From positions 62,001 through 126,000 of IMG/VR virus record IMGVR_UViG_3300037116_000299: 64,000 nt of DNA. The stretch is one strand, 5' to 3'. This document shows positions 8,204 through 60,584 of the stretch, one piece after another. Below the pieces are notes generated by a model, which saw nothing but the letters and a program-made list of their open reading frames with translations, was not told the DNA's origin and did not search any database. The first letter of the stretch is position 1, and each line of letters opens with the position of its first letter. Position numbers and translations under genes: made by a program.

Positions 8204-8389
8204 TTAGACCTCAATCTCTATGCCGTCTTCGACAATCGAAGTGATCTCCTCACCCTTGAGGGTCTCTTCGTTTACGGGAGCGATCGTGCGATCCTTCTCC
8301 CATAGAGCTTTGGCTTCAGCGCCCGACTTTGCTTTGATCTCGTAGGTGCGCTCGATGACTCGCTGCGCGTAGATGGTGTAGGTCTTCAT
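8204..8389 (-). CDS. small hypothetical protein
   Basis: ORF with SD, coupled to upstream gene. Confidence 0.55.
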   Translation of the reverse strand: MKTYTIYAQRVIERTYEIKAKSGAEAKALWEKDRTIAPVNEETLKGEEITSIVEDGIEIEV

Positions 8390-9507
8390 CAGCCCTCCTT
8401 GGCCGTTTCCCGCTGATAGCGGAACTCACATGTGGCCGCACTTCCCTGCTCGATCTCGGACCACTTGAAGAGGCACGGATCGGTCAGATAATTGGCGTAG
8501 GGATTGATCTCGAGCAGACGGGTCTTGAGGCGGTAGTACACTCCTCCGCTACCGCTGATCCAGGGATCGATCGTGCACGGGTTCACCGGATCCCGCTCTT
8601 CGCGCTCCAGGAACACGTCGAAGACCACCGAATCCACATGACACGCGTCACGGAACTCCAGGTCAAAGAATCGAGTAATCGCCTGCCGGATCTGAGCAGC
8701 GTACTTGCTGACCTCAGGATGAGTCGCCCGGTAGTTGTACTGACTGATGCCGACCAGTTCCCGATCCTTCATAAAGCAACGGAACTCGCACCAGTCCGGC
8801 ATCGCGATGCCCTTGCGGACAAAGATGTGAGGCGCATACTTCATGGCCAGCTGAGTCTGCAGATCCTCATAGATCCGCTCCGTGCCGGCCGTGAGCAGCT
8901 CGAAGGCCTGCTTGCCACTGGTGATCTGGCCATTAGGCACCTGGCCCCTGGCGTCGATACCCCAGTACATCGCGTCCTTGGGACTGCGCGAACCCAGGCG
9001 GATGAACGCCTTGTCGTAATGCCGGATCATGTGATCCAAGTGGTCGATCATCAGGTCCTTGATCGTCTCGTGGTTTTCCGGCGCGCTGAAGGCTTCACCC
9101 AGCTCGGCGTTGTAACTGCCCAGGGTCTCGGCTTGCCCCCGACTGAGCTTCAGATACATTGACGGAATCGAGAGATCCCGCAACGCCTTCGGCCAGTTCT
9201 CAAGGTAGGTCGGAAGCGACAGCTCCCACATCGAAGGCTTGGGCGCATACTTCTCATCCCGCGGCTTCTTCGACCACTCGTCGAACGCGGCCGCGTGCGC
9301 TGCCATCAGTGCCTTGGCGACCAGGATCCGTAAAGGGGACCCGGGTTCCAGAGTGTGGGGATTGATCTCGTGTAGCGGGACGCCGGCAACGCGGTTGCAG
9401 CCCTCACAAGGATGGGTGATGTGGCTGAGGCAGCCTGCGTGATCGCAGGGCTGTCCACGTTCCAGAACGGGCATAGCGTCTCCTAAAACAGCAATGGCTC
9501 GCGTCAT
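8389..9507 (-). CDS. Cdc123/D123-like (R2K clade) ATP-grasp protein
   Basis: FIRLGSRSPKDA, EFRCFMKDRELVGISQY, VVFDV and LLEINPY motifs. Confidence 0.75.
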   Translation of the reverse strand: MTRAIAVLGDAMPVLERGQPCDHAGCLSHITHPCEGCNRVAGVPLHEINPHTLEPGSPLRILVAKALMAAHAAAFDEWSKKPRDEKYAPKPSMWELSLPTYLENWPKALRDLSIPSMYLKLSRGQAETLGSYNAELGEAFSAPENHETIKDLMIDHLDHMIRHYDKAFIRLGSRSPKDAMYWGIDARGQVPNGQITSGKQAFELLTAGTERIYEDLQTQLAMKYAPHIFVRKGIAMPDWCEFRCFMKDRELVGISQYNYRATHPEVSKYAAQIRQAITRFFDLEFRDACHVDSVVFDVFLEREERDPVNPCTIDPWISGSGGVYYRLKTRLLEINPYANYLTDPCLFKWSEIEQGSAATCEFRYQRETAKEG

Positions 9508-9986
9508 GAGGCGCGAGCCTGGGGTACGACCCCTAACTTGTTGAGCATCGAGATGTCGAGTGTCCACACGTGCAGGCTCCGTTGAGCCCACAGTTCGAAC
9601 GCACCCTCAGCGTAGTAACGAGCGTCCGCCAAGGACCATTCGTTGACCTTCGCCAGGTGAGCCAAAGCTTCATTGACGCGGCCGCGGCTTTCCGCCAGGC
9701 CGATGTGCTTCACCTCGTGGCAGGACGGACACAGCGCCAGCATGTCGGTAAGCGCCTGGATTCGTTTCTGGTCGTGATACTGCCATTTCTCGTGGCATTC
9801 GACCGGCCACTTGGGCCCCACACCGTTGCAGATCTCGCAGCGATAGTGCGCCTTGCGATAGGCCATCCGCTTGATCCGGGTCCACATCTCGGCCGTGACT
9901 TCCGATCGCACGTTCGAGAACCAACACGTGGATGGCACTAGTTCGATCGTGAGTCTGGGCGGTGTTAGTCCGTCAATACCTGGCAT
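9504..9986 (-). CDS. HNH endonuclease-family protein
   Basis: IELVPSTCWFSNVRS, CEIC, ECHEKW, LCPSCHEVKH. Confidence 0.85.
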   Translation of the reverse strand: MPGIDGLTPPRLTIELVPSTCWFSNVRSEVTAEMWTRIKRMAYRKAHYRCEICNGVGPKWPVECHEKWQYHDQKRIQALTDMLALCPSCHEVKHIGLAESRGRVNEALAHLAKVNEWSLADARYYAEGAFELWAQRSLHVWTLDISMLNKLGVVPQARAS

Positions 9987-11802: not shown

Positions 11803-12264
11803 TTAGCGGATGATTCCGTACAGGTCGAGATGACCGATCGCAGGATCTACCTGCGCAAAGGTCGTCGGCACCGTGCAGATCGCTGTCATGACGCGGCCCT
11901 TCGTTCCATAGAACTCTGGGTTGACATCGGAGAAGGTGAAAACCGTAACCAATTCACCAAGCTCCTTGAGGACCTTGGCCAATTCCCGACTATTCCGAAC
12001 CGACAGGACGATGGTAGTCATCTCCCGATAGCCTTCATGCCAGTTCTCGTTGCGGAGGAGCAACCTGGGTTCAGCCGGAGTGCAGGAAAGATGCTCGTTC
12101 TCCATCTTGCGGGCGACATGCGCAACCTGAGCCATCAAACGGCCAGGTTCCATCGGGATACGGGTGGTGACGGTGGCCTTGCGTTCCTTGGTCGTAACGA
12201 GCACCGATTCAGGCACGATCACATAAATGCGCGGGGGCTCCGGCAGTAACTTCTTCTTCTTCAT
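11803..12264 (-). CDS. pth2: peptidyl-tRNA hydrolase, Pth2 family
   Basis: MEPGRLMAQVAH, TIVLSV, D...EF..T..TAIC pattern. Confidence 0.8.
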   Translation of the reverse strand: MKKKKLLPEPPRIYVIVPESVLVTTKERKATVTTRIPMEPGRLMAQVAHVARKMENEHLSCTPAEPRLLLRNENWHEGYREMTTIVLSVRNSRELAKVLKELGELVTVFTFSDVNPEFYGTKGRVMTAICTVPTTFAQVDPAIGHLDLYGIIR

Positions 12265-12282: not shown

Positions 12283-13011
12283 TTAGGATGCGCGGCCTTC
12301 ACAGGCTGGCTGGCCACAACAGCAGGTGGTCTCGCCACACGCTGTACGTCCCTTGCTCTGTACGGGCAGAATGGAGGATGCAAACACGACCCGACGTGCG
12401 ATCGCGTACATCACCAACTGCGCTTTGTTGTGGACGCCCAGTTTCTGGTACGTGTTGAACTTGTGAACTTCCACCGTCTTCACACTGATGCCCAGCATGA
12501 TGGCGATCTCCTTCACCGTGTTGCCTTCGGCCAGGAGCTTGAAGACCTCGCGCTCGCGCGGGGTCAGCTGATCGATCTTTGAGACCATAGCAGGGTTGCC
12601 GATGAACCGATCCGCCGCCGGCATGTACTTCGTCCCGCGGTGAACCCGTTCAATGGCAACCTGCAGCTCGGCGCAACTAGCTGTCAGCTCGACGACTCCG
12701 TCGGCGCCGGCCTTGACGGCCTCGATGACATGTTCTTCCTCGCCGTTCGCGGCCAGGAAGATCACCCGAAGCGTCCGATGTTGCTGGCGAGCCCACCGGG
12801 CTGCGTCATACGGATTTGGACCCGGGATCGTTGCGTCGAGAATCAGGATATCTACACCCAGGTTCACCGCCTCTTCGGCTGCCTCCCTGGCATCCCCGAA
12901 GTCGGCGAGGACGCGAATCGCGTCACTCTTGGTGAGGGTTTCCCGTACACACTCCCGCAGGAGGGTATGCTTATCGGCGATCACACAACGAATCACTAAA
13001 ACTCCAGACAA
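12283..13011 (-). CDS. NarL/LuxR-family response regulator (orphan)
   Basis: REC domain with ILILD; LTPREREVFKLLAEG...KEIA..LGISVKTVEVH. Confidence 0.9.
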   Translation of the reverse strand: MSGVLVIRCVIADKHTLLRECVRETLTKSDAIRVLADFGDAREAAEEAVNLGVDILILDATIPGPNPYDAARWARQQHRTLRVIFLAANGEEEHVIEAVKAGADGVVELTASCAELQVAIERVHRGTKYMPAADRFIGNPAMVSKIDQLTPREREVFKLLAEGNTVKEIAIMLGISVKTVEVHKFNTYQKLGVHNKAQLVMYAIARRVVFASSILPVQSKGRTACGETTCCCGQPACEGRAS

Positions 13012-13089: not shown

Positions 13090-13580
13090 GCGTGAGGTCG
13101 CTAATCGACCACCACGAGGGAGGAAGGCTCCCGGGCTTTCACCGGGATGCAGGCGACTGAGTATTCAAGTTCAACCCTTACTTGATGCCTTGTTAGGCAG
13201 CAGCGAGATACGCTGCCTCGAATGCCGCGGCCGGAGCCGGGAAAGCGAGGACTTCTGCGGTCTTGCTGGCGAGGTAACCCGTGGTGTTGGCAGTTATTCG
13301 TCGTGGTCTCCCATATCGCGGGCGGCCGACTCGGCGCGTCACCATCTTGTTCCGTATCCCGTCGAAGCCGTGACGGGCCCACCTCAAAGCTCTTGTCCTA
13401 TTGGGACAGTGGTTCAAAAGAGCGTCGAGGTGGACCCGGCGGGAGTCGAACCCGCGTCCGAAACGAAGAAGAAGATGTGTGTCTTTTCACGAGCGTTTTA
13501 GTCCATCCGTTTCCAGCGGACCAAACCCCATTGCTGGGGAAACTTGTTATGTCCACCTCCAGAGAATCGCATCGGGAAAG
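13090..13580 (-). ncRNA. ssrA: tmRNA, circularly permuted two-piece gene (acceptor piece ~13580-13431, spacer 13428-13381, coding piece 13380 to ~13090; outer ends approximate)
   Basis: 3' tmRNA end GGACGCGGGTTCGACTCCCGCCGGGTCCA lies upstream of the 5' end GGGCCCGTCACGGCTTCGACGGG; G3-U70 pair; ATAACT-GCC resume site; tag ends in YLAAA*. Confidence 0.9.
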
Positions 13581-13604
13581 ACATTGAGGTATAGGGCGAA
13601 CCCC

Positions 13605-13901
13605 TTAGACTTCGAGGTGCGTAAGCAGCTCAGTCCGTATCGTGCAACTGGCCGGCACGCCGTGACGGCCGCTGCCCCACTGCACTTGAACCTGGCCGTG
13701 AAACCCGCTCTGCCAGTTCGGACTGATCTTCAGGTCCACTGTGTGGCAACCCGCGTCCTTGCAGAGCTGCAGCACCTGGCGGCATAGCTCGGCGATGGTC
13801 GCAGGAAGCACGGGAGTCTGAAGCACCTGCAGATCGCAGGTAAGGCACTTCAGGGTGTCGCCCGCCGGGCGCGGATGTTGACAGATACAAAACTCGCTCA
13901 T
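13605..13901 (-). CDS. hypothetical protein (CxC...CxxC)
   Basis: ORF with GGAGG SD. Confidence 0.55.
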   Translation of the reverse strand: MSEFCICQHPRPAGDTLKCLTCDLQVLQTPVLPATIAELCRQVLQLCKDAGCHTVDLKISPNWQSGFHGQVQVQWGSGRHGVPASCTIRTELLTHLEV

Positions 13902-16417: not shown

Positions 16418-18205
16418 TCAAGCTCGGGCCTCAAGTGACTTGGCTAGTATCTCTAACTGTCTGATGAAGACCCGCCGACCTTTCTTCTCTTGCAATCCTG
16501 CGCGTATTTCACGCTGAGTCGCAGCGTAGTCGCCTTGCTCGAAGTGGTATCGGGCCAATTCTAGATGCATTTTCTGCCTTACTTGTCGAGCTAGATCTCG
16601 TCTTGAAGTCTTGGCCGCCATATTCTCAGCACGTTTGTACAACCGGCGGCCTGCCTCATAATCTCCTTCCCTCAGGTGCAGAAGACCTATAGTCGCAATC
16701 AACTCAACATGGTCATCAACGTTCCTTGGCCTGGAGTCTAGAACATGTTTGGCCTGAGCAGTCTGACCTTCCATTAGCAAGAAATAGGATAAGTTGTTGA
16801 TGATGGAGAAAGACTTGGGATATTGAGCATATCCCTCCATCAACAGTTGGATCGCCTTCTCTCCAAAACCAGCTTCACCGTAATAGCTTCCGAGCGATGC
16901 ATAGTTGTCAGCAGAAAGCGGGCCGAACGTTCGTAGTGCTTCAATCTGCAAGATTGCTTCTGGGTAATTATCTTGTTCAGCATAAAAGATGCTTAAGAGT
17001 GAGCGCGTTTCTCGACTAGAAGGGAACAGTTCGACCGCGTGCTCCAATACCTTTATAGCGAGAGGCTTTCTGCTCGTTAGCCCATACACGCGAGCCAAAT
17101 TGTCATACGGGATATGAGAGTTTCTCGGCGCTTTCTCAATTGCAAGCTTCAGTTCGACAACGGCTCTATCAAAAGACTTCTCATGTACGAAAGTTACCGC
17201 GATGTTTGAATGGGCGCGCCCAACCTCATCGCTGGAAAGCGTATCCCCTCCCAACTCGAGAATTCTTACGATTTGCGATCTTGCCATCGAATGCCGCTTC
17301 GATTGCATGTAGGCAGCAGCCAACTGATCACGCGCTTGTATATCCGCTGGATGCCGTTCTACGAAATCTTGCAACATTTCAATCGCTTGATCAGATTTAT
17401 CAAACGTGAGCAAAGTTCCGGCGAGGCTGATCACGGTTGTCGCTGAGTCAGGCGCCAAAGCGAGGGCCGTCTTGAATGCCTTTTCAGCACGAGAATGATC
17501 ACCCTGAAGAGCGTACGCGACTCCCATTGAGTGGTAGAGCTGCGGGCTGCGAAAGTCCAAATGTGAGGCGGCACGAAACTCATTCAATGCACGGCGAAGG
17601 TCCGACCTCTGGAGACACATGATGCCTAAGAGGAAGCGCACATACGGATCGCGTGGACTAAGAGTTGCCGCCTTTGAGAGATGTGTGTTTGCATCTTCGA
17701 AGCGTCCTGCCTGAATTAGGACGTTTGATAATCCGACTTCGACAGCTGGGTTATCAGGGTAGGTAGCAAGCAATTTCTCATACCAGCGTTCCGCCTCAAC
17801 CGTACGTCCCGCTTCGAAATGTAACCGAGCGAGAGTTATGCTGGCCAGGTAGTTTCCTGGGTCAAGTTCCAAGGCGGTTTCTAATTCCTTCAAGGCCTCA
17901 TCGGGTTGACCCTGCTTCAAGAGAGCAATCCCAAGATTTGCATGTGCGCGACCACTACGTGGGAAGCGATCGCTGTGCCGACGCACCGATCGCTCAATAC
18001 CCGCGAGAATATTCTCTGCCGAAGGCGTAGTAGCGCCCACACCCTCTTTCGGCCAATCGATTTCGACAGACTGATCGCCTCTCCGGCTAACCGAGGCGGC
18101 TGTCCCGGGCAGCAACACATTTGTCGAAGGAGCGCTTAGGTCAAATCGCTCGGGGATCGTGCTCTTCTCAAATTCTCGAAGTTCGTCTTTGGAAGCTGTA
18201 TTCAT
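16418..18205 (-). CDS. tetratricopeptide-repeat protein
   Basis: Many TPR units (AHANLGIALLKQGQPDEA; YHSMGVAYALQGDHSRAEKAFKTALALAP); ATGA overlap with kinase. Confidence 0.9.
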   Translation of the reverse strand: MNTASKDELREFEKSTIPERFDLSAPSTNVLLPGTAASVSRRGDQSVEIDWPKEGVGATTPSAENILAGIERSVRRHSDRFPRSGRAHANLGIALLKQGQPDEALKELETALELDPGNYLASITLARLHFEAGRTVEAERWYEKLLATYPDNPAVEVGLSNVLIQAGRFEDANTHLSKAATLSPRDPYVRFLLGIMCLQRSDLRRALNEFRAASHLDFRSPQLYHSMGVAYALQGDHSRAEKAFKTALALAPDSATTVISLAGTLLTFDKSDQAIEMLQDFVERHPADIQARDQLAAAYMQSKRHSMARSQIVRILELGGDTLSSDEVGRAHSNIAVTFVHEKSFDRAVVELKLAIEKAPRNSHIPYDNLARVYGLTSRKPLAIKVLEHAVELFPSSRETRSLLSIFYAEQDNYPEAILQIEALRTFGPLSADNYASLGSYYGEAGFGEKAIQLLMEGYAQYPKSFSIINNLSYFLLMEGQTAQAKHVLDSRPRNVDDHVELIATIGLLHLREGDYEAGRRLYKRAENMAAKTSRRDLARQVRQKMHLELARYHFEQGDYAATQREIRAGLQEKKGRRVFIRQLEILAKSLEARA

Positions 18206-19332
18206 GAATTTGCTCCAGTCGTCAGAGTATTTTGCAGTCGCGACTGCTTCAACTCCGGAACTTTCCGATATGCTTTCTTGCGTTCGATCCAGCGAGCATA
18301 TGCGGCTTGATTCTTGAGGACCACCAGGCACTGATTAATCTGCAGGAACGTGGACGTGCAGTCTTTGGCACGTTGGCGGTAATCCAGTGCAGCAAGCGCC
18401 CTATACATACGATTAAGAATTGGAGCGATTGAGCGCGGCACAGCGGCACCGAAGTCCCGCACATCAGGGAGAGGAAATCGATTGGATATTGACCCAACCC
18501 CCTTATGGAATTCGTTCACTTTGTCGCCAGGAAGAATCGATCCTATAACCATATTGAGATCCATCAACATGTTTCTGCTAAACAGATGAAGGTTCAACGG
18601 AGTACCTGTGAACATCTCGAACAGTACAGCTCCCAAGGCGAACATGTCTCCGGCATATGCAATGTCTGGCAAAATGTCGTGGAGCGACGCCACCATCTCT
18701 AAGGGTGCGTACGTCCAGTCGCCTGGAGGTCCCGTGTACCGCTTTAATGGCCCCCTCGAGTCTGTCAATGAACGGGCTGTACCGAAGTCGGACAACCGTA
18801 GAGTGCCGTCCGTCATGACGAGAAAGTTTGACGGCTTAATGTCGCGATGGACGATTCCTTGCCGATGTATCCTCTGGACCGCTCTGCAAATCGTCCGAAA
18901 GTGAAGAAGTTTATCCGCAGGGTCAATGTCATATGTGTCTAAGACTGTTCCGAGATCGCAAGAAGCCAATTCCATTGCATAGAACCTGAGCGTAACCGGA
19001 AGAATCATCCCCAAAGGATGTTGGAATGGTTCAACTATCTGCTGCATATCCGAATATCGCCGTAAGATGTCTGGCTGATCTTCTAAACCACCCAAAACCT
19101 CGACTTCCCTCGTGAATGATTCGAGCCGATAGGGATCAATAACGGAAGGATCGAAGAACTTGAGCGCCACCTTCTGTCCAGTTACTTGGTCGTGTGCTTC
19201 GAAAAGCAAGGAAAAGGTACCGCCACCGCCGGTGACCCCCAACCGTTTCATGTTGGTGAATCGACCGCAGAGTTCGGTCTTGCTTTCGATCAAACTAAGA
19301 AACGGCTCAGGGTTTGAGCTCGGATTTGCCAT
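18202..19332 (-). CDS. Hanks-type Ser/Thr protein kinase
   Basis: GGGGTFS, VALK, HRDIKPSN, DFG, YAPLE, DMFALG. Confidence 0.93.
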   Translation of the reverse strand: MANPSSNPEPFLSLIESKTELCGRFTNMKRLGVTGGGGTFSLLFEAHDQVTGQKVALKFFDPSVIDPYRLESFTREVEVLGGLEDQPDILRRYSDMQQIVEPFQHPLGMILPVTLRFYAMELASCDLGTVLDTYDIDPADKLLHFRTICRAVQRIHRQGIVHRDIKPSNFLVMTDGTLRLSDFGTARSLTDSRGPLKRYTGPPGDWTYAPLEMVASLHDILPDIAYAGDMFALGAVLFEMFTGTPLNLHLFSRNMLMDLNMVIGSILPGDKVNEFHKGVGSISNRFPLPDVRDFGAAVPRSIAPILNRMYRALAALDYRQRAKDCTSTFLQINQCLVVLKNQAAYARWIERKKAYRKVPELKQSRLQNTLTTGANS

Positions 19333-19615
19333 CCGTCTCTCCAAATTGCCTTCTCAGAAATGCAACGGCATCGTCCGGATGATCTCGAAGAATTCGGAGT
19401 ATATCCTCCGGCACCTTTCCTGCCGATAACAGGAGTGCATCCCGGTCAAACCCAAAATACTCCGAAACTCGATCAACAAGATCCTCTGAGGGGCTGATAG
19501 TCTCGTTTTCCAATTTGCTCAGGTAGGTATAGTTCACCCTCAATTCTGGGGCCAGAGACTTAATGCCTAGCCCACTCTCCAACCGCAATTGGCGCAGAAT
19601 CTTCCCGAACTTCAT
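19307..19615 (-). CDS. XRE-family HTH regulator
   Basis: FGKILRQLR...LA....NYTYLSKLEN...PS...L...AGKVP. Confidence 0.85.
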   Translation of the reverse strand: MKFGKILRQLRLESGLGIKSLAPELRVNYTYLSKLENETISPSEDLVDRVSEYFGFDRDALLLSAGKVPEDILRILRDHPDDAVAFLRRQFGETDGKSELKP

Positions 19616-26312: not shown

Positions 26313-26436
26313 GGGGCCGGGCAGGATTCGAACCTGCGACCTACGGGTTTGCTCGGCTTTAGCCAGTTGCTGGTTGACCCAACGTGTGGATTGCCTTCAG
26401 TTGGCCCGCTGTTCTAACCGCTGAACTACCGGCCCC
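26313..26436 (-). ncRNA. tRNA-like RNA with a 57-nt structured insert replacing the anticodon loop
   Basis: Intact acceptor, D, anticodon-stem and T arms; insert at 26348-26404; no encoded CCA. Confidence 0.8.
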
Positions 26437-29749: not shown

Positions 29750-30847
29750 TTACGGGGAGGACTTGAAGAATTGGGAGAGAGGAGTCCACGTTCGAGAGAC
29801 AGTGGCTCTGCAGAACTCCAGGATGCGAACAATACTCCACCTCTGTCTGAGGACGTCGGAGTAGAAATAACCCAACCAGCCAAGGAGCCAGACTTCCAGA
29901 TCCAATTGCAGCTCTGGTGTAAGTTCTGGTAACTCCGAGATGCCACGCATTCCTTCGAGTGTGGCCAGACTGGTTTCAATCTGGGTTAGTACCTGCTGAT
30001 AGGGGATCTCCCCGAGTCTCACTTGGCGCAGGTAAGTGCGCAGCGGGTCAGGAAGCGGAAACGTCAGTTTCCCGGTCGCGAGTAGGGTGATTCCCTCGTT
30101 CACGATACGGAGAGCATGAGACGTGGCCTTCCAGTCCACGTTGCTCTCTGACGCCTGCTTAGCGCGGCTGCCAAACTTGGCGAGCAGAGCCTCTGCAGTT
30201 TGCAGGTTGTAGCGGAAGCTCGACGTATAGGGCAGGATCTTGTCGAGCAGTTTGATGCAGGGGCGCATGGCGCCCTTACCGGAGGCATCGTACTCCGTAA
30301 CGTGGAAGTATTCCGGAAACTCCTTCTCAATCAACCGCGCCTTCTCTTCAAGGAACGGCTGGACCATGAACAAACGCTCATCGGCCCGGAAGCCTTTGAG
30401 CAGTTCGATGGTGGCGAGCACAGCATTCAGCCGCTCGCCCTTCAAGGAGTACAAACCAGCCTGATCCGCACAGTACCGGGCAATCGCCCGGATCTGTGAG
30501 GTCAGAAAGCGCTCGCGCAGTTCATGACAGAACTGGCGGAACCGTGGATCGTAGATCGTCTGCTCGGCCCCATTGAAGTCGACAGCGAACACCAACTCCA
30601 GGGCATAGCTCTGACCGCCCATGAAGTCCCGCGCCAGGATGTGGAGCGGGATGTTCTCGACATCAATGTGCTCGGCCGAGTTCTTTCCGGTGCCGGTCTT
30701 GGTGGACCGGTACTTGTTCTTGGGCGCACGGCCCAGCAGGAGATCCGAGAACTTCGGCAGGATCACGTGCTTGATGTCACGGTCAGAGGTAGGAATGGTC
30801 GTGCCGTACAGGCTCGACCCGTACAGGCAACTAAAGAGGGTTCGCAA
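29750..30847 (-). CDS. DNA polymerase beta-superfamily nucleotidyltransferase
   Basis: YGSSLYGT...SDRDIK and DWKATSHALR motifs. Confidence 0.82.
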   Translation of the reverse strand: MRTLFSCLYGSSLYGTTIPTSDRDIKHVILPKFSDLLLGRAPKNKYRSTKTGTGKNSAEHIDVENIPLHILARDFMGGQSYALELVFAVDFNGAEQTIYDPRFRQFCHELRERFLTSQIRAIARYCADQAGLYSLKGERLNAVLATIELLKGFRADERLFMVQPFLEEKARLIEKEFPEYFHVTEYDASGKGAMRPCIKLLDKILPYTSSFRYNLQTAEALLAKFGSRAKQASESNVDWKATSHALRIVNEGITLLATGKLTFPLPDPLRTYLRQVRLGEIPYQQVLTQIETSLATLEGMRGISELPELTPELQLDLEVWLLGWLGYFYSDVLRQRWSIVRILEFCRATVSRTWTPLSQFFKSSP

Positions 30848-31190
30848 CGACAACCTCCTGGGAAAGATGGGAGTCAATCCCCTTCTGGATATTGGCGACG
30901 GGCTGCATCCCGGTCAGAGTAGCCAGCTTGTTCTCGCCGTCGAACAGGATCAGGGTAGGAACCCCGCGGACGTTGTAGGAAGCTGCCCGGTGATTGGTCA
31001 GGTCGACGTCGTAATAAAGCACGTTGACCACGCCGGCGTTCTGCTTGGCGATGACCTCGACATTCACTCGGATCTGCTCGCACGGGCCACACCACGCCGC
31101 TCCGAAAAGCACCAGGGTAAGGCCATCCGCTTTGCCTACGGCGTCCGACCAGGTGGTGTCGGTCACGCTTCCAATCAGGCTCTTCGCCAT
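30831..31190 (-). CDS. trxA: thioredoxin
   Basis: WCGPC active site, VRGVPTL. Confidence 0.92.
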   Translation of the reverse strand: MAKSLIGSVTDTTWSDAVGKADGLTLVLFGAAWCGPCEQIRVNVEVIAKQNAGVVNVLYYDVDLTNHRAASYNVRGVPTLILFDGENKLATLTGMQPVANIQKGIDSHLSQEVVVANPL

Positions 31191-33004: not shown

Positions 33005-34213
33005 TTATGCTGCGATGAGGTGAGTGGGCTTGTCCTCGCCCTGGCCATCGATGTAGAAGACGTCCCGGCCGTGAGGCCGAACGATCTTCCAGAGAGCCTC
33101 ATGGGCCTCCCAGATCCGGTTGTCCATCATCATCATGGCGATCGGGCCCAGGACCATGTCCCGTTCGATCACCAGGCGATAGAACTCCCGGTCATCCTTG
33201 ACCTCGGCGCGCAATGGTGTAATCCAGGCCAGAACATCCAGCGCCTTACAGATCTGGAAGTGAAAAGCCTGATAGAGTCTCCTCTGCCATTCCTCGATCC
33301 AGGTCTTGAAGTGAGGCGGCAACTGCGACTGCAGGTGCGTCGGCCTCAACCATGGCTTGAGCGGATCGCCCATCTGTTCCCAGATCATCTGGGGCGTCAC
33401 ATTGGTGACCAGGCGATGCAGCCGGAGATACTCCTCGAGCTTGATCTTCACCTTGAGCGGGGGTTGTCCGCCGCGGCGGACTGAGACCACATAACCCTCA
33501 CGGGTCAGGTCCTTATCCTGCCTGCAGGCCATCAGAGTCTTACCCGAGAAGGCAGGCACTACGCGGCACCATGGTTTCCCCTTGGCGCCTGCGTTCAGCT
33601 CCTTCCAGAGGCCTTCCAGTTGCCAGTGGCGCAACTCGTCACCGGTGTCGTTCATGACGGTCGTCAAAAGCACCAGGGCCTCGTAGTCGTAAGGAATCAC
33701 GATGCGGAGATGCTTGGCGACGATCTCAACGATCAAGGTCAATCCCTTGGGGATGCACTCGACCATGCCATACTTGACGAACTTCTGGAACTTGGCAGTC
33801 GCCCAGATCGCGCCGTCCGAGGTGAACGACCCGCGGGTGGCCACACCCCAGTGCTCCTTGTAGTTCCAGACGATGCCCATCTGGCCATCGATTTTGTCGG
33901 TGAACTCCAGCTCGTTGCCGTAGGCCCGGGCAATGCCCAGGACGAACTCCTCTGAGAATTCCAATAGTCCTTGGCCAACGATGTCGACCGTCTGGCCCAG
34001 GTTGAAGAACTTCGGTTGCGGACGCGCGATGACCTCATCGGTATCATCGATGATCAGACCGCGGCAGAAGCAGATCTCCGTGCTCCAACGCTCATCGATC
34101 GTAGCCTTATGGGTATAGTTGAAGATCCGTAACGGCAGAGTCGGGTGGTGTTGAATACCGATGTAACCATTGGCGATCTCCTGCTTGAGTGCGTCCGTCC
34201 AAATCATCTTCAT
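33005..34213 (-). CDS. T4 Rnl1-like RNA ligase
   Basis: CRGLIID, ARPQPKFFN, motif I KIDG, ATRGSFTS, EGYVV, KVKIK..EY.RLH. Confidence 0.9.
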   Translation of the reverse strand: MKMIWTDALKQEIANGYIGIQHHPTLPLRIFNYTHKATIDERWSTEICFCRGLIIDDTDEVIARPQPKFFNLGQTVDIVGQGLLEFSEEFVLGIARAYGNELEFTDKIDGQMGIVWNYKEHWGVATRGSFTSDGAIWATAKFQKFVKYGMVECIPKGLTLIVEIVAKHLRIVIPYDYEALVLLTTVMNDTGDELRHWQLEGLWKELNAGAKGKPWCRVVPAFSGKTLMACRQDKDLTREGYVVSVRRGGQPPLKVKIKLEEYLRLHRLVTNVTPQMIWEQMGDPLKPWLRPTHLQSQLPPHFKTWIEEWQRRLYQAFHFQICKALDVLAWITPLRAEVKDDREFYRLVIERDMVLGPIAMMMMDNRIWEAHEALWKIVRPHGRDVFYIDGQGEDKPTHLIAA

Positions 34214-34977
34214 ATTCGTGTCTGCCCCTTTGCGTGGCGAATGACCTTGTTCCCGTACGGGCTCATCTTCTGTTCCTGAGCTGTCAGGTCGTACTTGTGA
34301 TCCTTCCAGGCCTCGCATGCATGAACAGTTTCAGCATGAACATGGCCATCCGGGATGTCGCCAAACCAACGCCTCACGTGGCACCCACAGGCCAGTCGGG
34401 CCTCAATGCACATCGTCACGACTCGGCGAGTGGCCTTGATCTTGAGCTTGGGACGACGCGGACACTTGTTCAAATGCTTGAACAGAGGTGTCCTGTCTAA
34501 GACCGCACCGCAGTGCGGGCAGTGCTCTCGGCAGCCCTTCATCAGGCGGCCGCGGGTGTGGTGTTGATGGTGTCCAGCATGCCGCCGAACCGCTCCATCA
34601 GCGTCTGGGGACGCGTGCCGCGGGATGCAGCTGCTACCAGTCGGAGTTCGATTGCACCCTGGTCAAAGGTCACGATCTCGTCAGCAGACGAGGGTTGGGG
34701 TGCCATGTTGTGTTCGAGATACTCTTCACGAGCCTCCGCAGAGGCGAATCCAGCGAAACTACGGTTGTCCATGTTGCTCCTTCGGTCGTCGGTGCCAGAG
34801 CCTCAATATCCATGCAGGAATGAAGGCTCCTTTCTTGTGTGCAGATACGCGAAGCGGTATGTGCAGGTCATCGGCGATCGCTCGGATCGCCGCGTAAGCG
34901 GGATGCTCCCGGAATTCCTTGATCGCCGATTCTTCGCTATCGGCGATGCCCTCGATGAGGATCATGCGGATCTCCAT
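34210..34977 (-). other. three short hypothetical genes (34210-34542 Zn-finger-like, 34542-34772, 34759-34977)
   Basis: Coupled ORFs between RNA ligase and CCA enzyme. Confidence 0.5.
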
Positions 34978-36266
34978 TAGGAGACCGCCATTGGCGAGTT
35001 CCGAAGCTGTGTCGTTACAAACGCCACGGCTTCCTCACGCGTTTTGATCTTCTCTTCGAGCTGTTCGTCCTCGAGATTGTGCAGAACGAAGCCGAACGCA
35101 GGACTGGGCTTATAACCCAGGGCAATCAAGTCATCGCCGTTGAGCAGTACCTTGGGATAAGTCCCAGGCAAACCCGCCGCGCTCATGAACTGATCCACAC
35201 GATGAAATGCCCGTTGGCCCCCGGTGTAAGCCGGCCGCGCGAAGTAATCGTGCAGCGCCACCTGACGAATCAGGTCATAGTCCGCATCGCGGCGATAGCG
35301 CCGCTGTGCTGCCAGGTTCCAGTCCGGGATGCAGCTCCAAACCTGTGCCTTGGTGATGATGTTAGTGATCTGGGCAGCATCCGCCGTCGAGAACTTCAGA
35401 CCCAGCAGCGCGTTCTTCCGTGCCGTGGTGCCGAGATCCAGGAACAGCAGAGACAATGCGATCAGGACGTGATCCTTGACGGCCTGACCGTAGGCGCTGG
35501 ACCAGGAGATTGCAGGCATCTGGTTGAGGCGACGCAGAACCCTTCCGAAGTCGGTATCTAGCTCCGGCAGCAGGTAGTCCAGCAGGTTCGAGAGCAGAAG
35601 CAGTTCCAGGGCGCGTACGGCCCGGGGCTGGCTCAGCATCGCGATCAGCTCCTCGCGCTTCCGTTCTCCGCTGATCTCAGCGAGTAAGGGAGCATTGACG
35701 CGCATCGCGCCCCAGGTGGGCTCGTCAATCTGGAAGTCCAGCCGGGCGGCAAATCGGATTGCCCGGAGTAAACGCAGGGCGTCTTCTTCAAAGCGCCGGT
35801 TGGGATCCCCGATGCAGCGGATCTTCTTGTGCGCGATGTCCATGACTCCGCCGGTGAGATCCACCAGCTCACCGGTCTCGATGTCCAGGGCCAGGGCATT
35901 GATGGTGAAGTCCCGCCGCTGAACGTCCTCGGCCAGGGTCTTGCTGTAGACCACAGCGTCAGGGTGACGGTGGTCAGAATAGGCGTCCTCGGCGCGGAAG
36001 GTGGCGACCTCGAAACTCTCCTCATTGATCGTGACGAGAACGACGCCAAACTTAGCGCCTACGGGCTTGGAGCAATCTGGGAAGATTGCCATGACCTCGT
36101 CAGGCACTGCGTTGGTGACGATGTCATAGTCTTTGGGGAGATTGGCCAGGATACGATCTCGAACGCAACCGCCGATCAGGTAGGCTTCTTTGCCGGCCTT
36201 GCGTAGGTGGTAGATCAGCTTCTCGACCGCGACCATACGGACGGTCGGTTGCATTCTGAGGATCAT
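34977..36266 (-). CDS. cca: CCA-adding tRNA nucleotidyltransferase (class II)
   Basis: GGCVRD, KDYDI, EVATFR, RRDFTINA, EDALRLLRAIRF. Confidence 0.92.
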   Translation of the reverse strand: MILRMQPTVRMVAVEKLIYHLRKAGKEAYLIGGCVRDRILANLPKDYDIVTNAVPDEVMAIFPDCSKPVGAKFGVVLVTINEESFEVATFRAEDAYSDHRHPDAVVYSKTLAEDVQRRDFTINALALDIETGELVDLTGGVMDIAHKKIRCIGDPNRRFEEDALRLLRAIRFAARLDFQIDEPTWGAMRVNAPLLAEISGERKREELIAMLSQPRAVRALELLLLSNLLDYLLPELDTDFGRVLRRLNQMPAISWSSAYGQAVKDHVLIALSLLFLDLGTTARKNALLGLKFSTADAAQITNIITKAQVWSCIPDWNLAAQRRYRRDADYDLIRQVALHDYFARPAYTGGQRAFHRVDQFMSAAGLPGTYPKVLLNGDDLIALGYKPSPAFGFVLHNLEDEQLEEKIKTREEAVAFVTTQLRNSPMAVS

Positions 36267-36561
36267 GATTGTTTCACTTTCGGACGAGACATCATCGTTC
36301 GCCGGCAGGGACCGATGAACCAGGACCGGTCGAGTTTGTAGATCAACATGCCGTTTTCACGACAGCATAACTTACGCTCCACAATGGCTCCGTACCCGAG
36401 GCTTCGCGCGAGCCGCTTGGCTCGCTGAATCGTTCGGACTGTACGGAGAGGCGCGTTAGCGCCAGGTGAGAAGACGTCATAACGAAGGGAGCGTTTTGAT
36501 TCTCTGGACAATTCAACTTCCCTAACTGGCGCCGGGGATTAGCCGACGCCTTGGATTTGAC

Positions 36562-37776
36562 CTACTCGAGGTCGGTATCGGAGCAGCGGACGGGAATGAC
36601 CCGTACGCCATGTTCACGCCACATCTGAACCACACAGAGCCTGTCGTCAATCGCAAATGCGATCTCCGCTTTGCAGGCCAGCATCTGTTCGAGGATCGTG
36701 GCTTTCACATCGACATCGGTGATGTGGGCCGGTTCTTTGCGCATGAACAAGTGGTCGAACGGCACCATGTGTTTGTCCAGCGACTCCAGGGTCTCGCGAC
36801 CACAGCAGTTCATGTCGCGGCCGCTGACCAGGATGATCATGAAGCCCAGGGCACTGAGAGAGTGCAGCCAGTTCAGGATGATCTCGACCGGTTCGTCGTT
36901 GATGCACTCCTGCAGGAACTTGTAGTGATCCTTCTTGGCTTTGCCTGTGCCCTGGCAGATCCCGCATGGCATAGCGCCCGGGTCGTCCAATGCCTTCCCG
37001 GTGCCATAACATGGAGTGCAGATCCCGCTCACCAGGTGCTTCCGGTGATCCAGGTTGAACAGCGTGCCGTCGAGGTCACAGACCACAGCCGGATGGCCGC
37101 TCAGATCCAGGCGCCCGCTCAGAAGGTACTGCCGCTCGATCACCGGGCGGCCGACCTGTCTGCCTTCGAAGCGCATGGCGTCGCGGGCAATGCAATCCGC
37201 GATCGGGGTGTCGATGAACTTCACCTCGGCCTTGCGGAAGCACAGCTCTTCGGCGTAATCGAGCCACATCTGCCGGTGACCCGGGGTCAGGTTGGTGTCG
37301 TCGATGATGACATCCCTACCCTGTTCCCGCGCCGCACGGACAATGGCCTTCTCAGCCTCGATGATGAACTTCTCCTTCGAGGCAGCCCAACGAGGGATGG
37401 TCATCCGACGGATGTCGTCCCGGTTGATCCGGACCGCATGCCCGTTGTCCTGGATGTGCTTGAACGCAACCGTGGACTTGCCGCTCCCGGAAGGGCCGGA
37501 CAGGATGGTCATTCGGCCAATTGGAGTCGTGCCGACCTTCAGGAAGATCGCCTTCTCTGCCTCATGTGTCAGCTCACCGCCAACCAGTCTAAGACCAGTC
37601 GCACCATCGGGTAACACGTGACGGATGCCTTCCGGCGTCATCACGTATTCGTACGCCCCGTAGGGCTCGCCGATGGCTTTTACGTCGAGGAACGTGCCGC
37701 CAAAGTAGTCCGGGATCTCGATCCGGCCGGTCTTGAATGTTGCTGGTCTCATTACTCGTACCTCGTTGCTGTTCAT
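36562..37776 (-). CDS. pseT: polynucleotide 5'-kinase/3'-phosphatase (T4 PseT-like) with inserted Zn finger
   Basis: GPSGSGKST, NRDDIR, IIDDTNL; HAD motifs DLDGT, SGR and IDDR. Confidence 0.88.
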   Translation of the reverse strand: MNSNEVRVMRPATFKTGRIEIPDYFGGTFLDVKAIGEPYGAYEYVMTPEGIRHVLPDGATGLRLVGGELTHEAEKAIFLKVGTTPIGRMTILSGPSGSGKSTVAFKHIQDNGHAVRINRDDIRRMTIPRWAASKEKFIIEAEKAIVRAAREQGRDVIIDDTNLTPGHRQMWLDYAEELCFRKAEVKFIDTPIADCIARDAMRFEGRQVGRPVIERQYLLSGRLDLSGHPAVVCDLDGTLFNLDHRKHLVSGICTPCYGTGKALDDPGAMPCGICQGTGKAKKDHYKFLQECINDEPVEIILNWLHSLSALGFMIILVSGRDMNCCGRETLESLDKHMVPFDHLFMRKEPAHITDVDVKATILEQMLACKAEIAFAIDDRLCVVQMWREHGVRVIPVRCSDTDLE

Positions 37777-38501: not shown

Positions 38502-38549
38502 GTGTTTACCTTAGAAACTTAGGAGGGATTTGGGACTAGGGTGAACTAC

Positions 38550-39104
38550 TTAGGCAGCTGCCAGGATGGCCTTCTGCTTGTCGCTGTAGAAAGCGATCAG
38601 CTTCTGCATGACATCCTGTGCAGACTGGACCGTCAGGGTGCCTTTGCTGTGGACTCCGATTGGAGTGCCGATGCCACGGCAGATCCGAATTCCCTGCCCT
38701 GTTCCGCCGCCGCCGTCGCGGCCGGGCAGAGCCAGGCACGCTGTCGCGCCGTCCACGATCCCATAGTTGCGGGCATGCAAGGCAAAGGGGCCGCGCGACA
38801 AAGCCGCAGGATTGGGATGGTACTTGGTGACCGACTCAGTCCAGAGCGGATGGTGCTTCGGGTCATAGACCGTGCAGGCCGCCAGCGACGGAATCTTGTT
38901 CCGGTTGTAGCTGCCCCAGGGAAGAAATACGTCCAGCAGTCCGGGCTTGGCGCCCATCATGGCCAGGTAATCGATGCCGTCGGCACCGCCGGTACGGATC
39001 CTGACGCCTAACTGCGTGCTCAACGTCCAGGCAACCTCCTGGGCCAGGTCGATCTGAAACAAGTCCGGTTCGCGCGTGCCAATGATTGCCAGGCTCAGGT
39101 CCAT
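38550..39104 (-). CDS. SLOG/DprA-like Rossmann-fold protein
   Basis: AIIGTRE, RTGGADGID, FLPW, HARN, GGTGQGIR. Confidence 0.75.
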   Translation of the reverse strand: MDLSLAIIGTREPDLFQIDLAQEVAWTLSTQLGVRIRTGGADGIDYLAMMGAKPGLLDVFLPWGSYNRNKIPSLAACTVYDPKHHPLWTESVTKYHPNPAALSRGPFALHARNYGIVDGATACLALPGRDGGGGTGQGIRICRGIGTPIGVHSKGTLTVQSAQDVMQKLIAFYSDKQKAILAAA

Positions 39105-40375: not shown

Positions 40376-41374
40376 GAAGCAATCTCCTCAGTTACGGTGA
40401 CGGTCGTAACCCTCACCAAGCGCTTGGGCAAAGAGTCCTCGCGCTTCCAGCGTTTCAGCCACAAGTGACCTTCCTTCAAGGTCTCCGGCCGATCGCGCAG
40501 CAGTTCCATTGGACCGTTCGACGTGATCACCTGGATCTCAAGGTGCTCCTTCAGTTCAATCTTCGGATTCACTGATCCTCCTTGGGGCGATCTTCAGCTT
40601 GGCACGCTGTCTTACCACCGACTGCTCATGCGCAGCCTGTGCTGCTGCCGCTGTACGTGCCGCTCTACAGTCCGGACAGGGTTGCCACTTGTCGTGCTTC
40701 CGACAACGCTCTTCTTCATCGCGTGAGTAAAGTCCATACATTCAGCGCACTCTCGCATATTGCCCGCAACCAGGACAGTAGACGCCGGTCCAATCAGTCA
40801 ACGCGGTCTTGAAATGGACCTGGGCGCCGCAGCACGGTGTTGCTGTCTCATAGGGAACGGATTTAGGCACAAGTGCAGCTTCAACAACCAGGTTCAATAG
40901 GGTCACGATGTTCTCTTTCTGCACAGTAAAGCCGCGACCATGGCCGCGGCGATAAGGGGAACCACTTAGACTGGGCTAGCGCAGACCGATGAGGAACGGC
41001 ATTCGAGCCTCAGCATCAGCCTTAGTGCGCGACGTAGTCGCCTCCATGGCGCGGCCATTGTCATCCAGCAACATGTACCGATAGCTCGGCATGTACTCGC
41101 TGGTGAGAGCTGAAAGGTTGAGGGCCGCTCGCTGGGTCGACCCTTTCGGATGGTTCAGCGCTTCAAACGTGCGCCTCACTGCCATCATGATGTAGCCACC
41201 ATTTCCTCTTCTGCCGGAGCACTAGCCCCGCTTCGTGATCGCTTTCCCGATGATCAGCACGGCAATGATGGCTACCGGGATGCTGATGACCGACGCAGCG
41301 CACATTAGGGCAGGAATGATGATCCAACCCAGGCACACAAGGACGATGAATCCCAGGAAAACCCTGCCCATGCT

Positions 41375-58894: not shown

Positions 58895-58912
58895 ATAGGG
58901 TGAAACACTTAG
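58895..58912 (-). promoter_or_regulatory. representative copy of recurrent 18-bp intergenic motif CTAAGTGTTTCACCCTAT
   Basis: About 13 same-orientation copies across the window (see findings). Confidence 0.7.
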
Positions 58913-60378: not shown

Positions 60379-60584
60379 GGATGCTCTCCTTGTTGCAGGG
60401 TGTTGAAACAAACGGTGGTGCAGTGAGCGGAGCCAGGCTCAACGCTCGAAACTTGCGGCCCTGTACCCGACAGGGCCTGCAGTGGTGCGACCGCGGGCGT
60501 CAGAGATACACCCAGGGTTTGCTACGTGGAGAATCAGTAGAAAGGTTGGAGGATGGGGGTAGAGAAACCCATCGGGTGAAACTC

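What the first reader, a model, noticed from the sequence alone, without database searches (positions are those of the whole stretch)
13090..13608. Phage-encoded circularly permuted (two-piece) tmRNA with a 32-aa tag
Seen: on the minus strand the tmRNA 3' module (GGACGCGGG-TTCGACT-CCCGC-CGGGTCC-A, ending 13431) comes before the 5' module (GGGCCCG...TTCGACGGG, starting 13380). The two pair into a 7-bp acceptor stem with the G3-U70 alanine determinant. The 48-nt spacer folds back on itself (CCTC/GAGG, GCTCT/AGAGC, TGTCC/GGACA). After ATAACT the tag frame 13291-13193 reads ANTTGYLASKTAEVLAFPAPAAAFEAAYLAAA*. CCA is only partly encoded (ACCT), and a copy of the 18-bp motif sits just upstream (13591-13608). 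Known: permuted tmRNAs occur in Alphaproteobacteria and some cyanobacterial and betaproteobacterial lineages, and tags are usually about 10 aa. Inference: a phage-borne, possibly independent permutation with a very long tag, matured by the phage CCA enzyme. No smpB is in the window.
Basis: partly seen in the sequence, partly recalled or inferred. Interest (0 to 1): 0.85.

Follow-up and report, generated by a model that had tools for sequence, protein, structure and literature searches.

The report
Jumbo-phage two-piece tmRNA, long tag
A 214-kb phage carries a real, circularly permuted (two-piece) tmRNA gene, a ribosome-rescue RNA; phage tmRNAs of this kind are already known, but this one belongs to a small, mostly phage-borne group whose degradation tag is about three times the usual length.

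Summary
Rfam tmRNA_permuted (RF04321) scores 68.7 bits against a gathering score of 47. The window is part of IMG/VR contig 3300037116_000299 (214,300 bp), a jumbo phage. Phage-borne two-piece tmRNAs are not new: Buchholz et al. 2022 counted 53 among isolate phages, and tmRNAs in jumbo phages are often reported. What stands out is the subtype. It fails the alpha and beta lineage models and belongs to a small family: 17 viral or metagenome loci (the window included) on at least 11 contigs, plus one contig binned to an Acidobacteriaceae MAG. Tags in this family are 26-32 aa, made of ordinary tag ends around an inserted middle with a hydrophobic-(F)-P core. The frame is kept by 3-nt indels and synonymous changes, and stem changes are compensatory, so the gene is under selection. 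Two related large phages keep the gene order tmRNA, response regulator, Pth2-like peptidyl-tRNA hydrolase, with tRNAs following in the window and one relative. No smpB is in the window. An independent permutation event cannot be shown or excluded. Verdict: a real gene, a new variant of a known kind, of moderate interest.

The parts
13591..13608 (-). 18-bp promoter-like motif CTAAGGGGTTCGCCCTAT; its TAA is the stop codon of the upstream ORF 13605-13901
   Evidence: 3 sites with <=3 mismatches vs 0.03 expected; consensus CTAAGtGgTTCaCCCTAT, further copies at 38536, 40952, 58895, 60571, all on the minus strand; a similar motif in relative L156. Promoter function is inferred. No sigma-70 promoter was found.
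13498..13590 (-). 5' leader of the precursor, with two small hairpins (CCCC 13539-13536 / GGGG 13529-13526; TCCG 13520-13517 / CGGA 13509-13506); mature 5' end unknown
   Evidence: Sequence. A CCCC-N5-GGGG hairpin lies at the same place in L036. ARAGORN puts the gene start at 13521.
13429..13497 (-). Acceptor piece: 3' strands of helix P2 (13497-13461), T-arm (13455-13439), 3' acceptor strand (13438-13432), discriminator A73 (13431), CC (13430-13429); terminal A not encoded
   Evidence: Rfam alignment; constrained cofold with 33 intermolecular pairs; pairs kept in all 14 related loci.
13381..13428 (-). Intervening sequence (48 nt) removed on maturation; it extends the acceptor stem into a 14-bp helix capped by a hairpin
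   Evidence: z = -7.3; most relatives have a spacer hairpin of different sequence and length (25-120 nt), with compensatory changes; it is weak in L149, L151 and L153.
13292..13380 (-). Coding piece, 5' part: 5' acceptor strand GGGCCCG (13380-13374), D-loop-like TCACGGCTTCGAC, 5' strands of P2, PK1 region, A-rich AATAACT just before the resume codon
   Evidence: PK1 itself could not be confirmed in the window; the Rfam hairpin has non-standard pairs.
13193..13291 (-). Tag reading frame: resume codon GCC 13291-13289, 32 codons, stop TAA 13195-13193
   Evidence: It is the only frame open in all relatives, indels are multiples of 3, and there are 8 synonymous-only codon differences from L156.
13091..13192 (-). 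Coding piece, 3' part: hairpin CAAGT/ACTTG 13184-13166 just after the stop (P5-like), hairpin CCCGG/CCGGG 13146-13130, terminal 10-bp hairpin 13116-13091; mature 3' end unknown
   Evidence: folds. The first two hairpins recur in L036, and the first also in L003, with base changes. No T-run terminator.
12283..13011 (-). Next gene downstream: response regulator (receiver domain + LuxR-type HTH); in the same position in L156/L160 and L161
   Evidence: Pfam Response_reg 53.8 bits, GerE 75.4 bits. 48-51% identical syntenic copies.
11803..12264 (-). Pth2-type peptidyl-tRNA hydrolase homologue, two genes downstream; syntenic in L156
   Evidence: Pfam PF01981 27.9 bits vs cutoff 23, profile 7-115 of 115; 44% identical copy in L156.
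34977..36266 (-). Phage CCA-adding enzyme (tRNA nucleotidyltransferase); candidate for adding the missing 3' A
   Evidence: Pfam PolyA_pol 132 bits plus RNA-binding domain. phrog_2244 215 bits. Any link to the tmRNA is inferred.

Best explanation
This is a functional phage ssrA gene of the circularly permuted form. Shown by computation: the gene has all the sequence and structure hallmarks of a permuted tmRNA and is conserved under selection. Inferred: it is transcribed as one precursor, probably from the phage-specific 18-bp motif about 70-100 nt upstream. The spacer hairpin is cut out, by RNase P at G1 (13380) and by 3' trimming after C75. The missing terminal A is added by a CCA-adding enzyme, the phage's own or the host's. 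The result is an acceptor piece of about 70 nt and a coding piece of about 290 nt, held together by the 7-bp acceptor stem and a long interrupted helix P2. Host AlaRS charges it through G3-U70 and A73. Host SmpB and EF-Tu deliver it to ribosomes stalled on broken or stop-less mRNAs in the infected cell. Translation resumes at GCC 13291 and adds a 32-residue tag ending in LAAA. It sits among other translation-maintenance genes: a Pth2-like peptidyl-tRNA hydrolase, 9 tRNAs, a CCA enzyme, an Rnl1-like RNA ligase and a PNKP. The most likely role is therefore to keep ribosomes available during infection, for example when host nucleases cut tRNAs or mRNAs. The tag has ordinary ends (AN..GY at the start, LAAA at the end) around an inserted middle of about 20 residues with a hydrophobic-(F)-P core. 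I infer that this insert adds or changes recognition by a protease or adaptor. The analogy is the long Mycoplasma tags, which are read by Lon and not ClpXP; I cite that from memory.
For: Identity as a permuted tmRNA: (ARAGORN; RF04321 68.7 vs 47). Structure; with P1 and the T-arm enforced the two pieces fold only 0.4 kcal/mol above the unconstrained optimum and form 33 intermolecular pairs. Selection on the RNA; in 14 loci P1 is 7/7 with 5 stem sequences, the T-stem is 5/5 with 4 variants, and G3-U70 and A73 never change. Selection on the peptide; only the tag frame is open in all relatives, indels are 3 nt, and the window differs from L156 by 8 synonymous-only and 13 amino-acid-changing codons, with 10 codons identical. 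Retention; two other large phage contigs (L160, 124 kb; L161, 178 kb) keep tmRNA then regulator (L160 then Pth2 and tRNAs as well), although the neighbouring proteins are only 44-51% identical. Phage context. Dependence on host SmpB; none in the window or in 303 kb of viral flanks.
Against: There is no expression, processing, charging or tagging data; the phage is uncultured and known only as a metagenome contig. The other 150 kb of the genome were not seen, so a phage smpB is not excluded. PK1 was not confirmed in the window. The unconstrained minimum-energy cofold of the window's pieces breaks the T-arm. The CC-T 3' end is unique among 14 relatives and rests on one assembly, so it could be an error or a mildly disabling mutation. 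The C-terminus LAAA (LAAV in the sister phages) departs from the canonical LAA, so recognition by ClpX is uncertain. The host is unknown; the Acidobacteriota assignment is weak.
Confidence: 0.8

Rival explanations
1. It is a decoy, not a rescuer. The RNA binds host SmpB (and perhaps AlaRS or EF-Tu) to shut down or compete with host trans-translation, and the tag is irrelevant.
For: A tRNA-like-domain-only tmRNA in mycobacteriophage DS6A is reported to resemble a molecule that inhibits tmRNA, perhaps by titrating SmpB (PMC4131195; PMC11915505). The Lacusarx paper suggests that phage tmRNA counteracts host tagging. No smpB is in the window.
Against: The full coding piece and tag frame are conserved, with synonymous changes and in-frame indels. 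Nothing about a decoy would require that.
Confidence: 0.07
2. It works as a tmRNA, but the long tag does not send proteins to ClpXP-type degradation. It either redirects them to another protease or adaptor, or marks or stabilises them for a purpose of the phage. This rival concerns only the fate of the tagged protein; it keeps the best explanation's trans-translation mechanism and overlaps with its own inference about the insert.
For: The insert has a conserved hydrophobic-(F)-P core in several subtypes. The tag is a local divergence hotspot: L003 vs L014 are 68% identical in the tag, 92-100% in the rest of the gene and about 89% across the loci. C-termini vary (LAAA, LAAV, QMAA, PMAA, LALAA). 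From memory: the long Mycoplasma tags switched specificity to Lon.
Against: All tags still end in a small hydrophobic C-terminus typical of degradation tags. No phage protease or adaptor was identified in the window. No PDB match for the tag.
Confidence: 0.3
3. It is a passenger: a host gene picked up recently, an attP-type fragment of a tmRNA integration site, or an assembly chimera, with no role for the phage.
For: tmRNA genes are common integration sites, and phages can carry fragments of them (PMC9004378; PMC4131195). A homologous gene lies in a chromosome-like context in L036.
Against: The gene is complete, not a 3' fragment. Phage genes on the same strand flank it on both sides, and a phage-specific motif precedes it. 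It occupies the same position in two other diverged large phages. No integrase was found among the neighbouring ORFs scanned.
Confidence: 0.04

Closest known systems
Phage-encoded two-piece tmRNAs (OM43 phage Melnitz, pelagimyophages, cyanophages; Buchholz et al. 2022, PMC9004378)
   Same: A complete permuted ssrA gene inside a lytic-looking phage genome among tRNAs and host-takeover genes, close to a transcription-factor gene, with no smpB reported.
   Different: Those are mostly marine, alpha- or cyano-type, and in Melnitz the gene is linked to a glutamine riboswitch. Here no riboswitch was found, the lineage models are not met, and the tag is 32 aa. No deposited phage genome matches the gene beyond 34 nt of the T-arm.
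Betaproteobacterial two-piece tmRNA (Rfam RF01850; Sharkady and Williams 2004, cited from memory)
   Same: It is the best-scoring lineage model for the window. It has the same order of parts and a spacer hairpin. True beta-type genes in viral contigs (L008, L150) share the same T-arm and acceptor sequence.
   Different: The score is 43.9 bits vs gathering 84, and only the tRNA-like domain aligns (model positions 78-165 of 331). Tags in L008 and L150 are 10-14 aa.
Alphaproteobacterial two-piece tmRNA (Rfam RF01849; Keiler, Shapiro and Williams 2000, cited from memory)
   Same: Two-piece architecture. One long-tag family member (L153) passes this model (59.5 vs 50).
   Different: Any alpha score for the window must be below 43.9, because it lost the clan competition, and so is below the gathering score of 50. 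Alpha tags are usually 12-14 aa.
Long ssrA tags of Mycoplasma, degraded by Lon (Gur and Sauer 2008, cited from memory)
   Same: A tag of about 27 aa, much longer than the modal 10 aa, whose extra residues carry protease recognition.
   Different: Those are one-piece tmRNAs in bacteria that lack ClpXP. There is no sequence similarity, and the protease that would read this tag is unknown.
One-piece tmRNAs of large phages (mycobacteriophage Bxz1 group, Bacillus phage G; PMC4131195)
   Same: Large phages with many tRNAs carry their own tmRNA and rely on host SmpB.
   Different: Those have the standard, unpermuted gene form and short tags.

Membership tests
tmRNA, permuted (two-piece) form | Reaches the curated score of the covariance model tmRNA_permuted (RF04321) | tested here: met
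   68.7 bits vs 47, E = 4e-11, full model. ARAGORN also calls it permuted.
tmRNA, permuted (two-piece) form | tRNA-like domain: 7-bp acceptor stem with G3-U70, discriminator A73, 5-bp T-stem with TTCGAnT loop | tested here: met
   All pairs are standard, and they are kept in 14 related loci through compensatory changes.
tmRNA, permuted (two-piece) form | Permuted gene order: the 3' half of the tRNA-like domain lies upstream of the 5' half, separated by an intervening sequence | tested here: met
   Acceptor 3' strand at 13438-13432, 5' strand at 13380-13374, 48-nt spacer.
tmRNA, permuted (two-piece) form | Helix P2 joining the two pieces | tested here: met
   about 19 P2 pairs in the constrained cofold. 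L003 and L014 form P2 without constraints, with different sequences.
tmRNA, permuted (two-piece) form | Pseudoknot PK1 upstream of the resume codon | tested here: inconclusive
   The Rfam hairpin has non-standard pairs in the window. A PK1-like arrangement can be read in L153 and L003, but no pseudoknot-capable prediction was run.
tmRNA, permuted (two-piece) form | Tag reading frame that starts at an Ala resume codon after an A-rich stretch and ends in a hydrophobic/Ala C-terminus and a stop | tested here: met
   GCC 13291 after AATAACT; the tag ends ...YLAAA, then TAA. The frame is conserved.
tmRNA, permuted (two-piece) form | Cleavage into two RNAs, alanylation, SmpB binding and trans-translation | not testable with these tools
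   Needs northern or RACE, in vitro charging and a non-stop reporter.
Betaproteobacterial lineage of two-piece tmRNA (RF01850) | Reaches the curated score of the lineage model over its full length | tested here: not met
   43.9 vs 84, model positions 78-165 only. Controls L008 (93.7) and L150 (104.6) pass.
Alphaproteobacterial lineage of two-piece tmRNA (RF01849) | Reaches the curated score of the lineage model | tested here: not met
   Any alpha match was dropped as scoring lower than beta's 43.9 in the same clan, so it is below the gathering score of 50. Relative L153 does pass (59.5), so the family as a whole is ambiguous.
Cyanobacterial lineage of two-piece tmRNA (RF01851) | Reaches the curated score of the lineage model | tested here: inconclusive
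   No cyano_tmRNA match appears in any table, and I did not see its clan or gathering score, so I cannot bound the window's score. It was not scored separately.

The most novel reading that the evidence does not exclude
The long-tag genes form a distinct, mostly phage-propagated lineage of two-piece tmRNA, either a fourth permutation event or a deep offshoot that none of the three lineage models captures. Its tag gained an insert of about 16-20 aa with a hydrophobic-(F)-P core that diversifies quickly between related phages. That would mean the tag is a point of phage-host conflict: the phage decides the fate of proteins from stalled ribosomes, for example by routing them to another protease or adaptor or by escaping the host's.
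Probability: 0.2. Interest if true: 0.7.

Novelty: new variant of a known kind. Interest (0 to 1): 0.45.

Why it matters
What phage tmRNAs are for is still an open question; published ideas range from keeping ribosomes free to counteracting host tagging. This group offers a handle on it. The tag has ordinary ends plus a conserved but fast-changing insert, so the tagged product should be easy to tell apart from host-tagged proteins by mass. Its protease dependence can also be compared directly with that of a short tag. The linkage with a Pth2-type peptidyl-tRNA hydrolase, tRNAs, a CCA enzyme and an RNA-repair pair points to a coherent phage kit for keeping translation running. For annotation, it shows that the lineage-specific Rfam models miss this subtype while the merged model finds it.

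Tried and rejected
(1) Close relatives among deposited phages: none. Megablast of 12 kb found nothing, and blastn of the gene found only a 34-nt T-arm match.

(2) Origin from an acidobacterial one-piece tmRNA. The single genome scan returned mostly Acidobacteriota one-piece genes that share the D-loop element. Those sequences were fetched with that very element. Outside it, identity is 50-60% to everything, including the beta-type L008. In that script the organism labels were missing from the files, so the acidobacterial group was not separated out. No conclusion can be drawn.

(3) Replacement of the standard gene at the same chromosomal locus in L036: no synteny with 119 bacterial tmRNA loci.

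(4) Extending L036's context: the protein is not on record.

(5) RNAalifold on a MAFFT alignment recovered P1, the T-arm and the spacer hairpin but mis-paired P2. I used per-sequence cofolds instead.

(6) The metagenome scan added only 3 loci, all of known subtypes.

(7) Sigma-70 promoter and intrinsic terminator scans found nothing.

(8) A riboswitch or other Rfam family in or near the gene: none credible.

(9) The tag peptide against the PDB: no match.

(10) Showing L153's alignment to the alpha model failed, because truncated standard-tmRNA matches won the clan competition on the shorter stretch.

(11) The two founding two-piece tmRNA papers are not held, so they are cited from memory.

Full report
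1. THE OBSERVATION

On the minus strand the T-arm is GCGGG-TTCGACT-CCCGC at 13455-13439. The 3' acceptor strand CGGGTCC is at 13438-13432 and the discriminator A at 13431. They lie upstream of the 5' acceptor strand GGGCCCG (13380-13374) and the D-loop-like TCACGGCTTCGAC. The two acceptor strands form 7 standard pairs, including G3-U70. After A73 come CC and then T, so the last A of CCA is not encoded.

The 48-nt spacer (13428-13381), together with the acceptor strands, folds into one continuous helix capped by a hairpin. The energy is -39.3 kcal/mol, z = -7.3, and none of 200 shuffles does as well.

ARAGORN calls a permuted tmRNA at 13102-13521(-) with the tag ANTTGYLASKTAEVLAFPAPAAAFEAAYLAAA. 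The Rfam model for permuted tmRNA (RF04321) matches over its full length with 68.7 bits, against a gathering score of 47.

2. WHAT THE WINDOW IS

Locus L010 is 100% identical to the window over 2,301 nt. It comes from IMG/VR contig 3300037116_000299, which is 214,300 bp. The window encodes:
- an Rnl1-like RNA ligase, a polynucleotide kinase-phosphatase, a CCA-adding enzyme and an ATP-dependent DNA ligase;
- an endolysin and several PHROG families;
- 9 tRNAs.

A 718-aa protein is 52-53% identical to proteins of the jumbo phages phiRSL1 and phiCbK. No deposited phage is close at the DNA level. This is an uncultured jumbo phage.

3. IS IT A WORKING GENE?

Three lines of comparative evidence say it is under selection.

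(a) RNA structure. I collected 14 loci with permuted genes of this general type from the viral and genome collections. All keep 7/7 acceptor pairs, using five different stem sequences, and 5/5 T-stem pairs, using four variants. G3-U70 and A73 never change. With the acceptor stem and T-arm enforced, the window's two pieces fold within 0.4 kcal/mol of the unconstrained optimum and make 33 intermolecular pairs: P1 plus a long interrupted P2. L003 and L014 form the same helices without any constraint, from different sequences.

(b) The tag frame. It is the only frame open in all relatives. Against the sister phage L156/L160, the window's tag differs by two 3-nt indels, 8 synonymous-only codons and 13 amino-acid changes, with 10 codons identical.

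(c) Gene order. L160 (124-kb contig) and L161 (178-kb contig) have the same order as the window: tmRNA, then a receiver-LuxR response regulator. In the window and L160 a Pth2-type peptidyl-tRNA hydrolase and tRNAs follow. The neighbouring proteins are only 44-51% identical.

A passenger gene or an assembly artefact would not show this pattern.

4. THE LONG-TAG FAMILY

The tags found are:
- window: 32 aa;
- L160/L161: ANTGYVASMTFEVFEPATAAEN[IT]LGVLAAV, 30 aa;
- L036: ANKGVLASKANVVSFPTRSAAPALALAA, 28 aa;
- L003/L004/L024/L146/L148: AKNTDSAKNAKVLAFPARPAVALQMAA, 27 aa;
- L014/L016/L021/L147: ATLKSVGTKFAKLLTFPVSEPVALPMAA, 28 aa (one residue differs in L021);
- L153/L154: ATNRDSAKSAKVLAFPAMPEALPMAA, 26 aa;
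- L158: ATQSDSTKRSNVLAFTRPERSALPLAA, 27 aa.

The ends look like ordinary tags: A-N/T-... at the start, ...L-x-x-A-A at the end. The short tag of L155/L157 (ANSNVALPIAA) looks like those two ends without the middle. So the length comes from an insert of about 16-20 aa whose best-kept part is [VL]-[LVF]-x-(F)-P.

Between L003 and L014 the tag is 68% identical. The rest of the gene is 92-100% identical and the loci as a whole about 89%. The tag is therefore a local hotspot of change.

L153 shares only the tmRNA with L003, so this subtype moves between unrelated phages. L003 and L024 are phage: a portal and a likely terminase lie next to the gene. L036 lies between GH92 and GH31 glycosidases in a contig binned to an Acidobacteriaceae MAG. 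That looks chromosomal, but I could not extend the context.

5. WHICH LINEAGE?

The window's best lineage-specific model is beta_tmRNA, with only 43.9 bits against a gathering score of 84, and only over the tRNA-like domain. Alpha_tmRNA is in the same clan and was dropped as scoring lower, so its score is below its own gathering score of 50. True beta-type genes in viral contigs pass (L008 93.7; L150 104.6).

One long-tag member, L153, passes alpha_tmRNA (59.5 vs 50), while L003, L036 and L158 score best with beta, below threshold. Outside the tRNA-like domain, identity to every comparator is 50-60%, which is noise for RNAs this short.

The tmRNA database paper lists 5 permuted genes whose best model is beta among 1,595 Acidobacteriota tmRNA instances (supplementary Table S2 of PMC11915505). 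Genes of this sort have probably been catalogued already, but they are not discussed. I cannot say whether the family stems from a separate permutation event.

6. MECHANISM

Shown by computation: a complete, conserved permuted tmRNA gene in a phage, and no smpB either in the window or in 303 kb of viral flanks.

Inferred from established knowledge of two-piece tmRNA:
- one precursor is made;
- RNase P cuts at G1;
- the spacer is trimmed away from the 3' side;
- the terminal A is added by a CCA-adding enzyme;
- AlaRS charges the RNA through G3-U70;
- host SmpB and EF-Tu deliver it to stalled ribosomes;
- translation resumes at GCC 13291.

The window's gene is the only one of 14 that lacks the encoded terminal A, whereas 6 of the 8 window tRNAs checked encode CCA. 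The phage has its own CCA enzyme.

An 18-bp motif (consensus CTAAGtGgTTCaCCCTAT) ends about 70-100 nt upstream of the gene. It recurs only on the gene-coding strand, and a similar motif is present in L156. It is likely a phage-specific promoter. No sigma-70 promoter or T-run terminator is present.

The neighbouring Pth2 homologue, the tRNAs, the CCA enzyme and the ligase-PNKP pair suggest a kit for keeping translation going, for instance under attack by host nucleases.

7. COMPARISON WITH WHAT IS KNOWN, AND NOVELTY

Phage tmRNAs are well known:
- mycobacteriophages and Bacillus phage G (PMC4131195);
- 79 phage sequences in the 2025 tmRNA database;
- 61 held papers that mention both tmRNA and jumbo phages.

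Two-piece forms in phages are known too. Buchholz et al. found 53 two-piece genes among 133 unique phage tmRNAs, 50 of them from marine or aquatic phages. They also list permuted calls in phages of Stenotrophomonas and Streptomyces.

The modal tag length is 10 aa. Long tags exist in Mollicutes (from memory).

So the headline 'phage-borne permuted tmRNA' is not new. What is new, as far as I can tell, is this subtype. It is not captured by the lineage models, and it is carried mainly by phages, including several of 124-214 kb. Its tags of 26-32 aa are built by an insert that is both conserved in its core and fast-changing.

I rate it a new variant of a known kind, with interest 0.45.

Noticed in passing
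window 26313-26435 (-): A tRNA found only by Rfam (55.8 bits). All four arms are intact, but 56 nt sit where the 7-nt anticodon loop should be, an insertion of about 49 nt. ARAGORN does not call it. The same phage encodes an RNA ligase and a PNKP, so an intron-like element joined by healing and sealing is conceivable.
   Followed up: partly
window 11803-12264 (-); L156 1259-2011: A Pth2-type (archaeal/eukaryotic-type) peptidyl-tRNA hydrolase homologue (PF01981, 27.9 bits) lies two genes downstream of the tmRNA and is syntenic in a related phage. PHROGs lists its family (phrog_1866) as of unknown function.
   Followed up: partly
window 12283-13011 (-); L160, L161: A phage-encoded response regulator (receiver domain plus LuxR-type HTH) lies directly downstream of the tmRNA and is conserved in two related large phage contigs.
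   Followed up: partly
window 13591-13608, 38536-38553, 40952-40969, 58895-58912, 60571-60588 (all -); L156 about 426-446: A recurring 18-bp motif, CTAAGtGgTTCaCCCTAT, occurs only on the gene-coding strand, and a similar motif is present in a related phage. Its length and its ...CCCTAT end recall single-subunit RNA polymerase promoters. No such polymerase was identified in the window.
   Followed up: partly
window 33005-37776 (-): A tRNA-repair cluster: Rnl1-like RNA ligase (33005-34318), CCA-adding enzyme (34977-36266) and polynucleotide kinase-phosphatase (36562-37776). A second nucleotidyltransferase is at 29750-30877.
   Followed up: no
window 8389-9591 (-): A 400-aa protein with a D123 (Cdc123-like) domain, 82.8 bits. 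This family is mostly eukaryotic.
   Followed up: no
window 16418-19344 (-): A large TPR protein and a Ser/Thr protein kinase lie in the stretch with the lowest G+C of the window (0.51 vs about 0.58), which may be a recent acquisition.
   Followed up: no
L003 vs L014 (tmRNA tag region): In two related phages the tag coding region is 68% identical, the rest of the tmRNA gene 92-100%, and the loci about 89%. The tag is a local hotspot of divergence or of cassette exchange.
   Followed up: partly
L021 4474-4950 (-): The intervening sequence carries an extra 55 nt that is the inverted copy of its neighbour. This turns the spacer into a nearly perfect hairpin of about 60 bp (-104 kcal/mol).
   Followed up: no
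L149 7121-7583 (332-kb contig): Next to a short-tag permuted tmRNA, ARAGORN finds two tRNAs with the anticodon CTA (reading TAG) and one with an odd anticodon. This may indicate stop-codon reassignment or suppression in a huge phage.
   Followed up: no
L036 3094-3492 (contig CAXTMY010000016.1): A long-tag permuted tmRNA lies between GH92 and GH31 glycosidase genes in a contig binned to an Acidobacteriaceae MAG, a group whose own tmRNA is one-piece with 9-aa tags. It could be a second cellular copy, a remnant of a mobile element, or a binning error.
   Followed up: partly
L005 8118-8560 (-): A one-piece tmRNA (RF00023, 90.6 bits) in a 57-kb viral contig that ARAGORN did not call.
   Followed up: no
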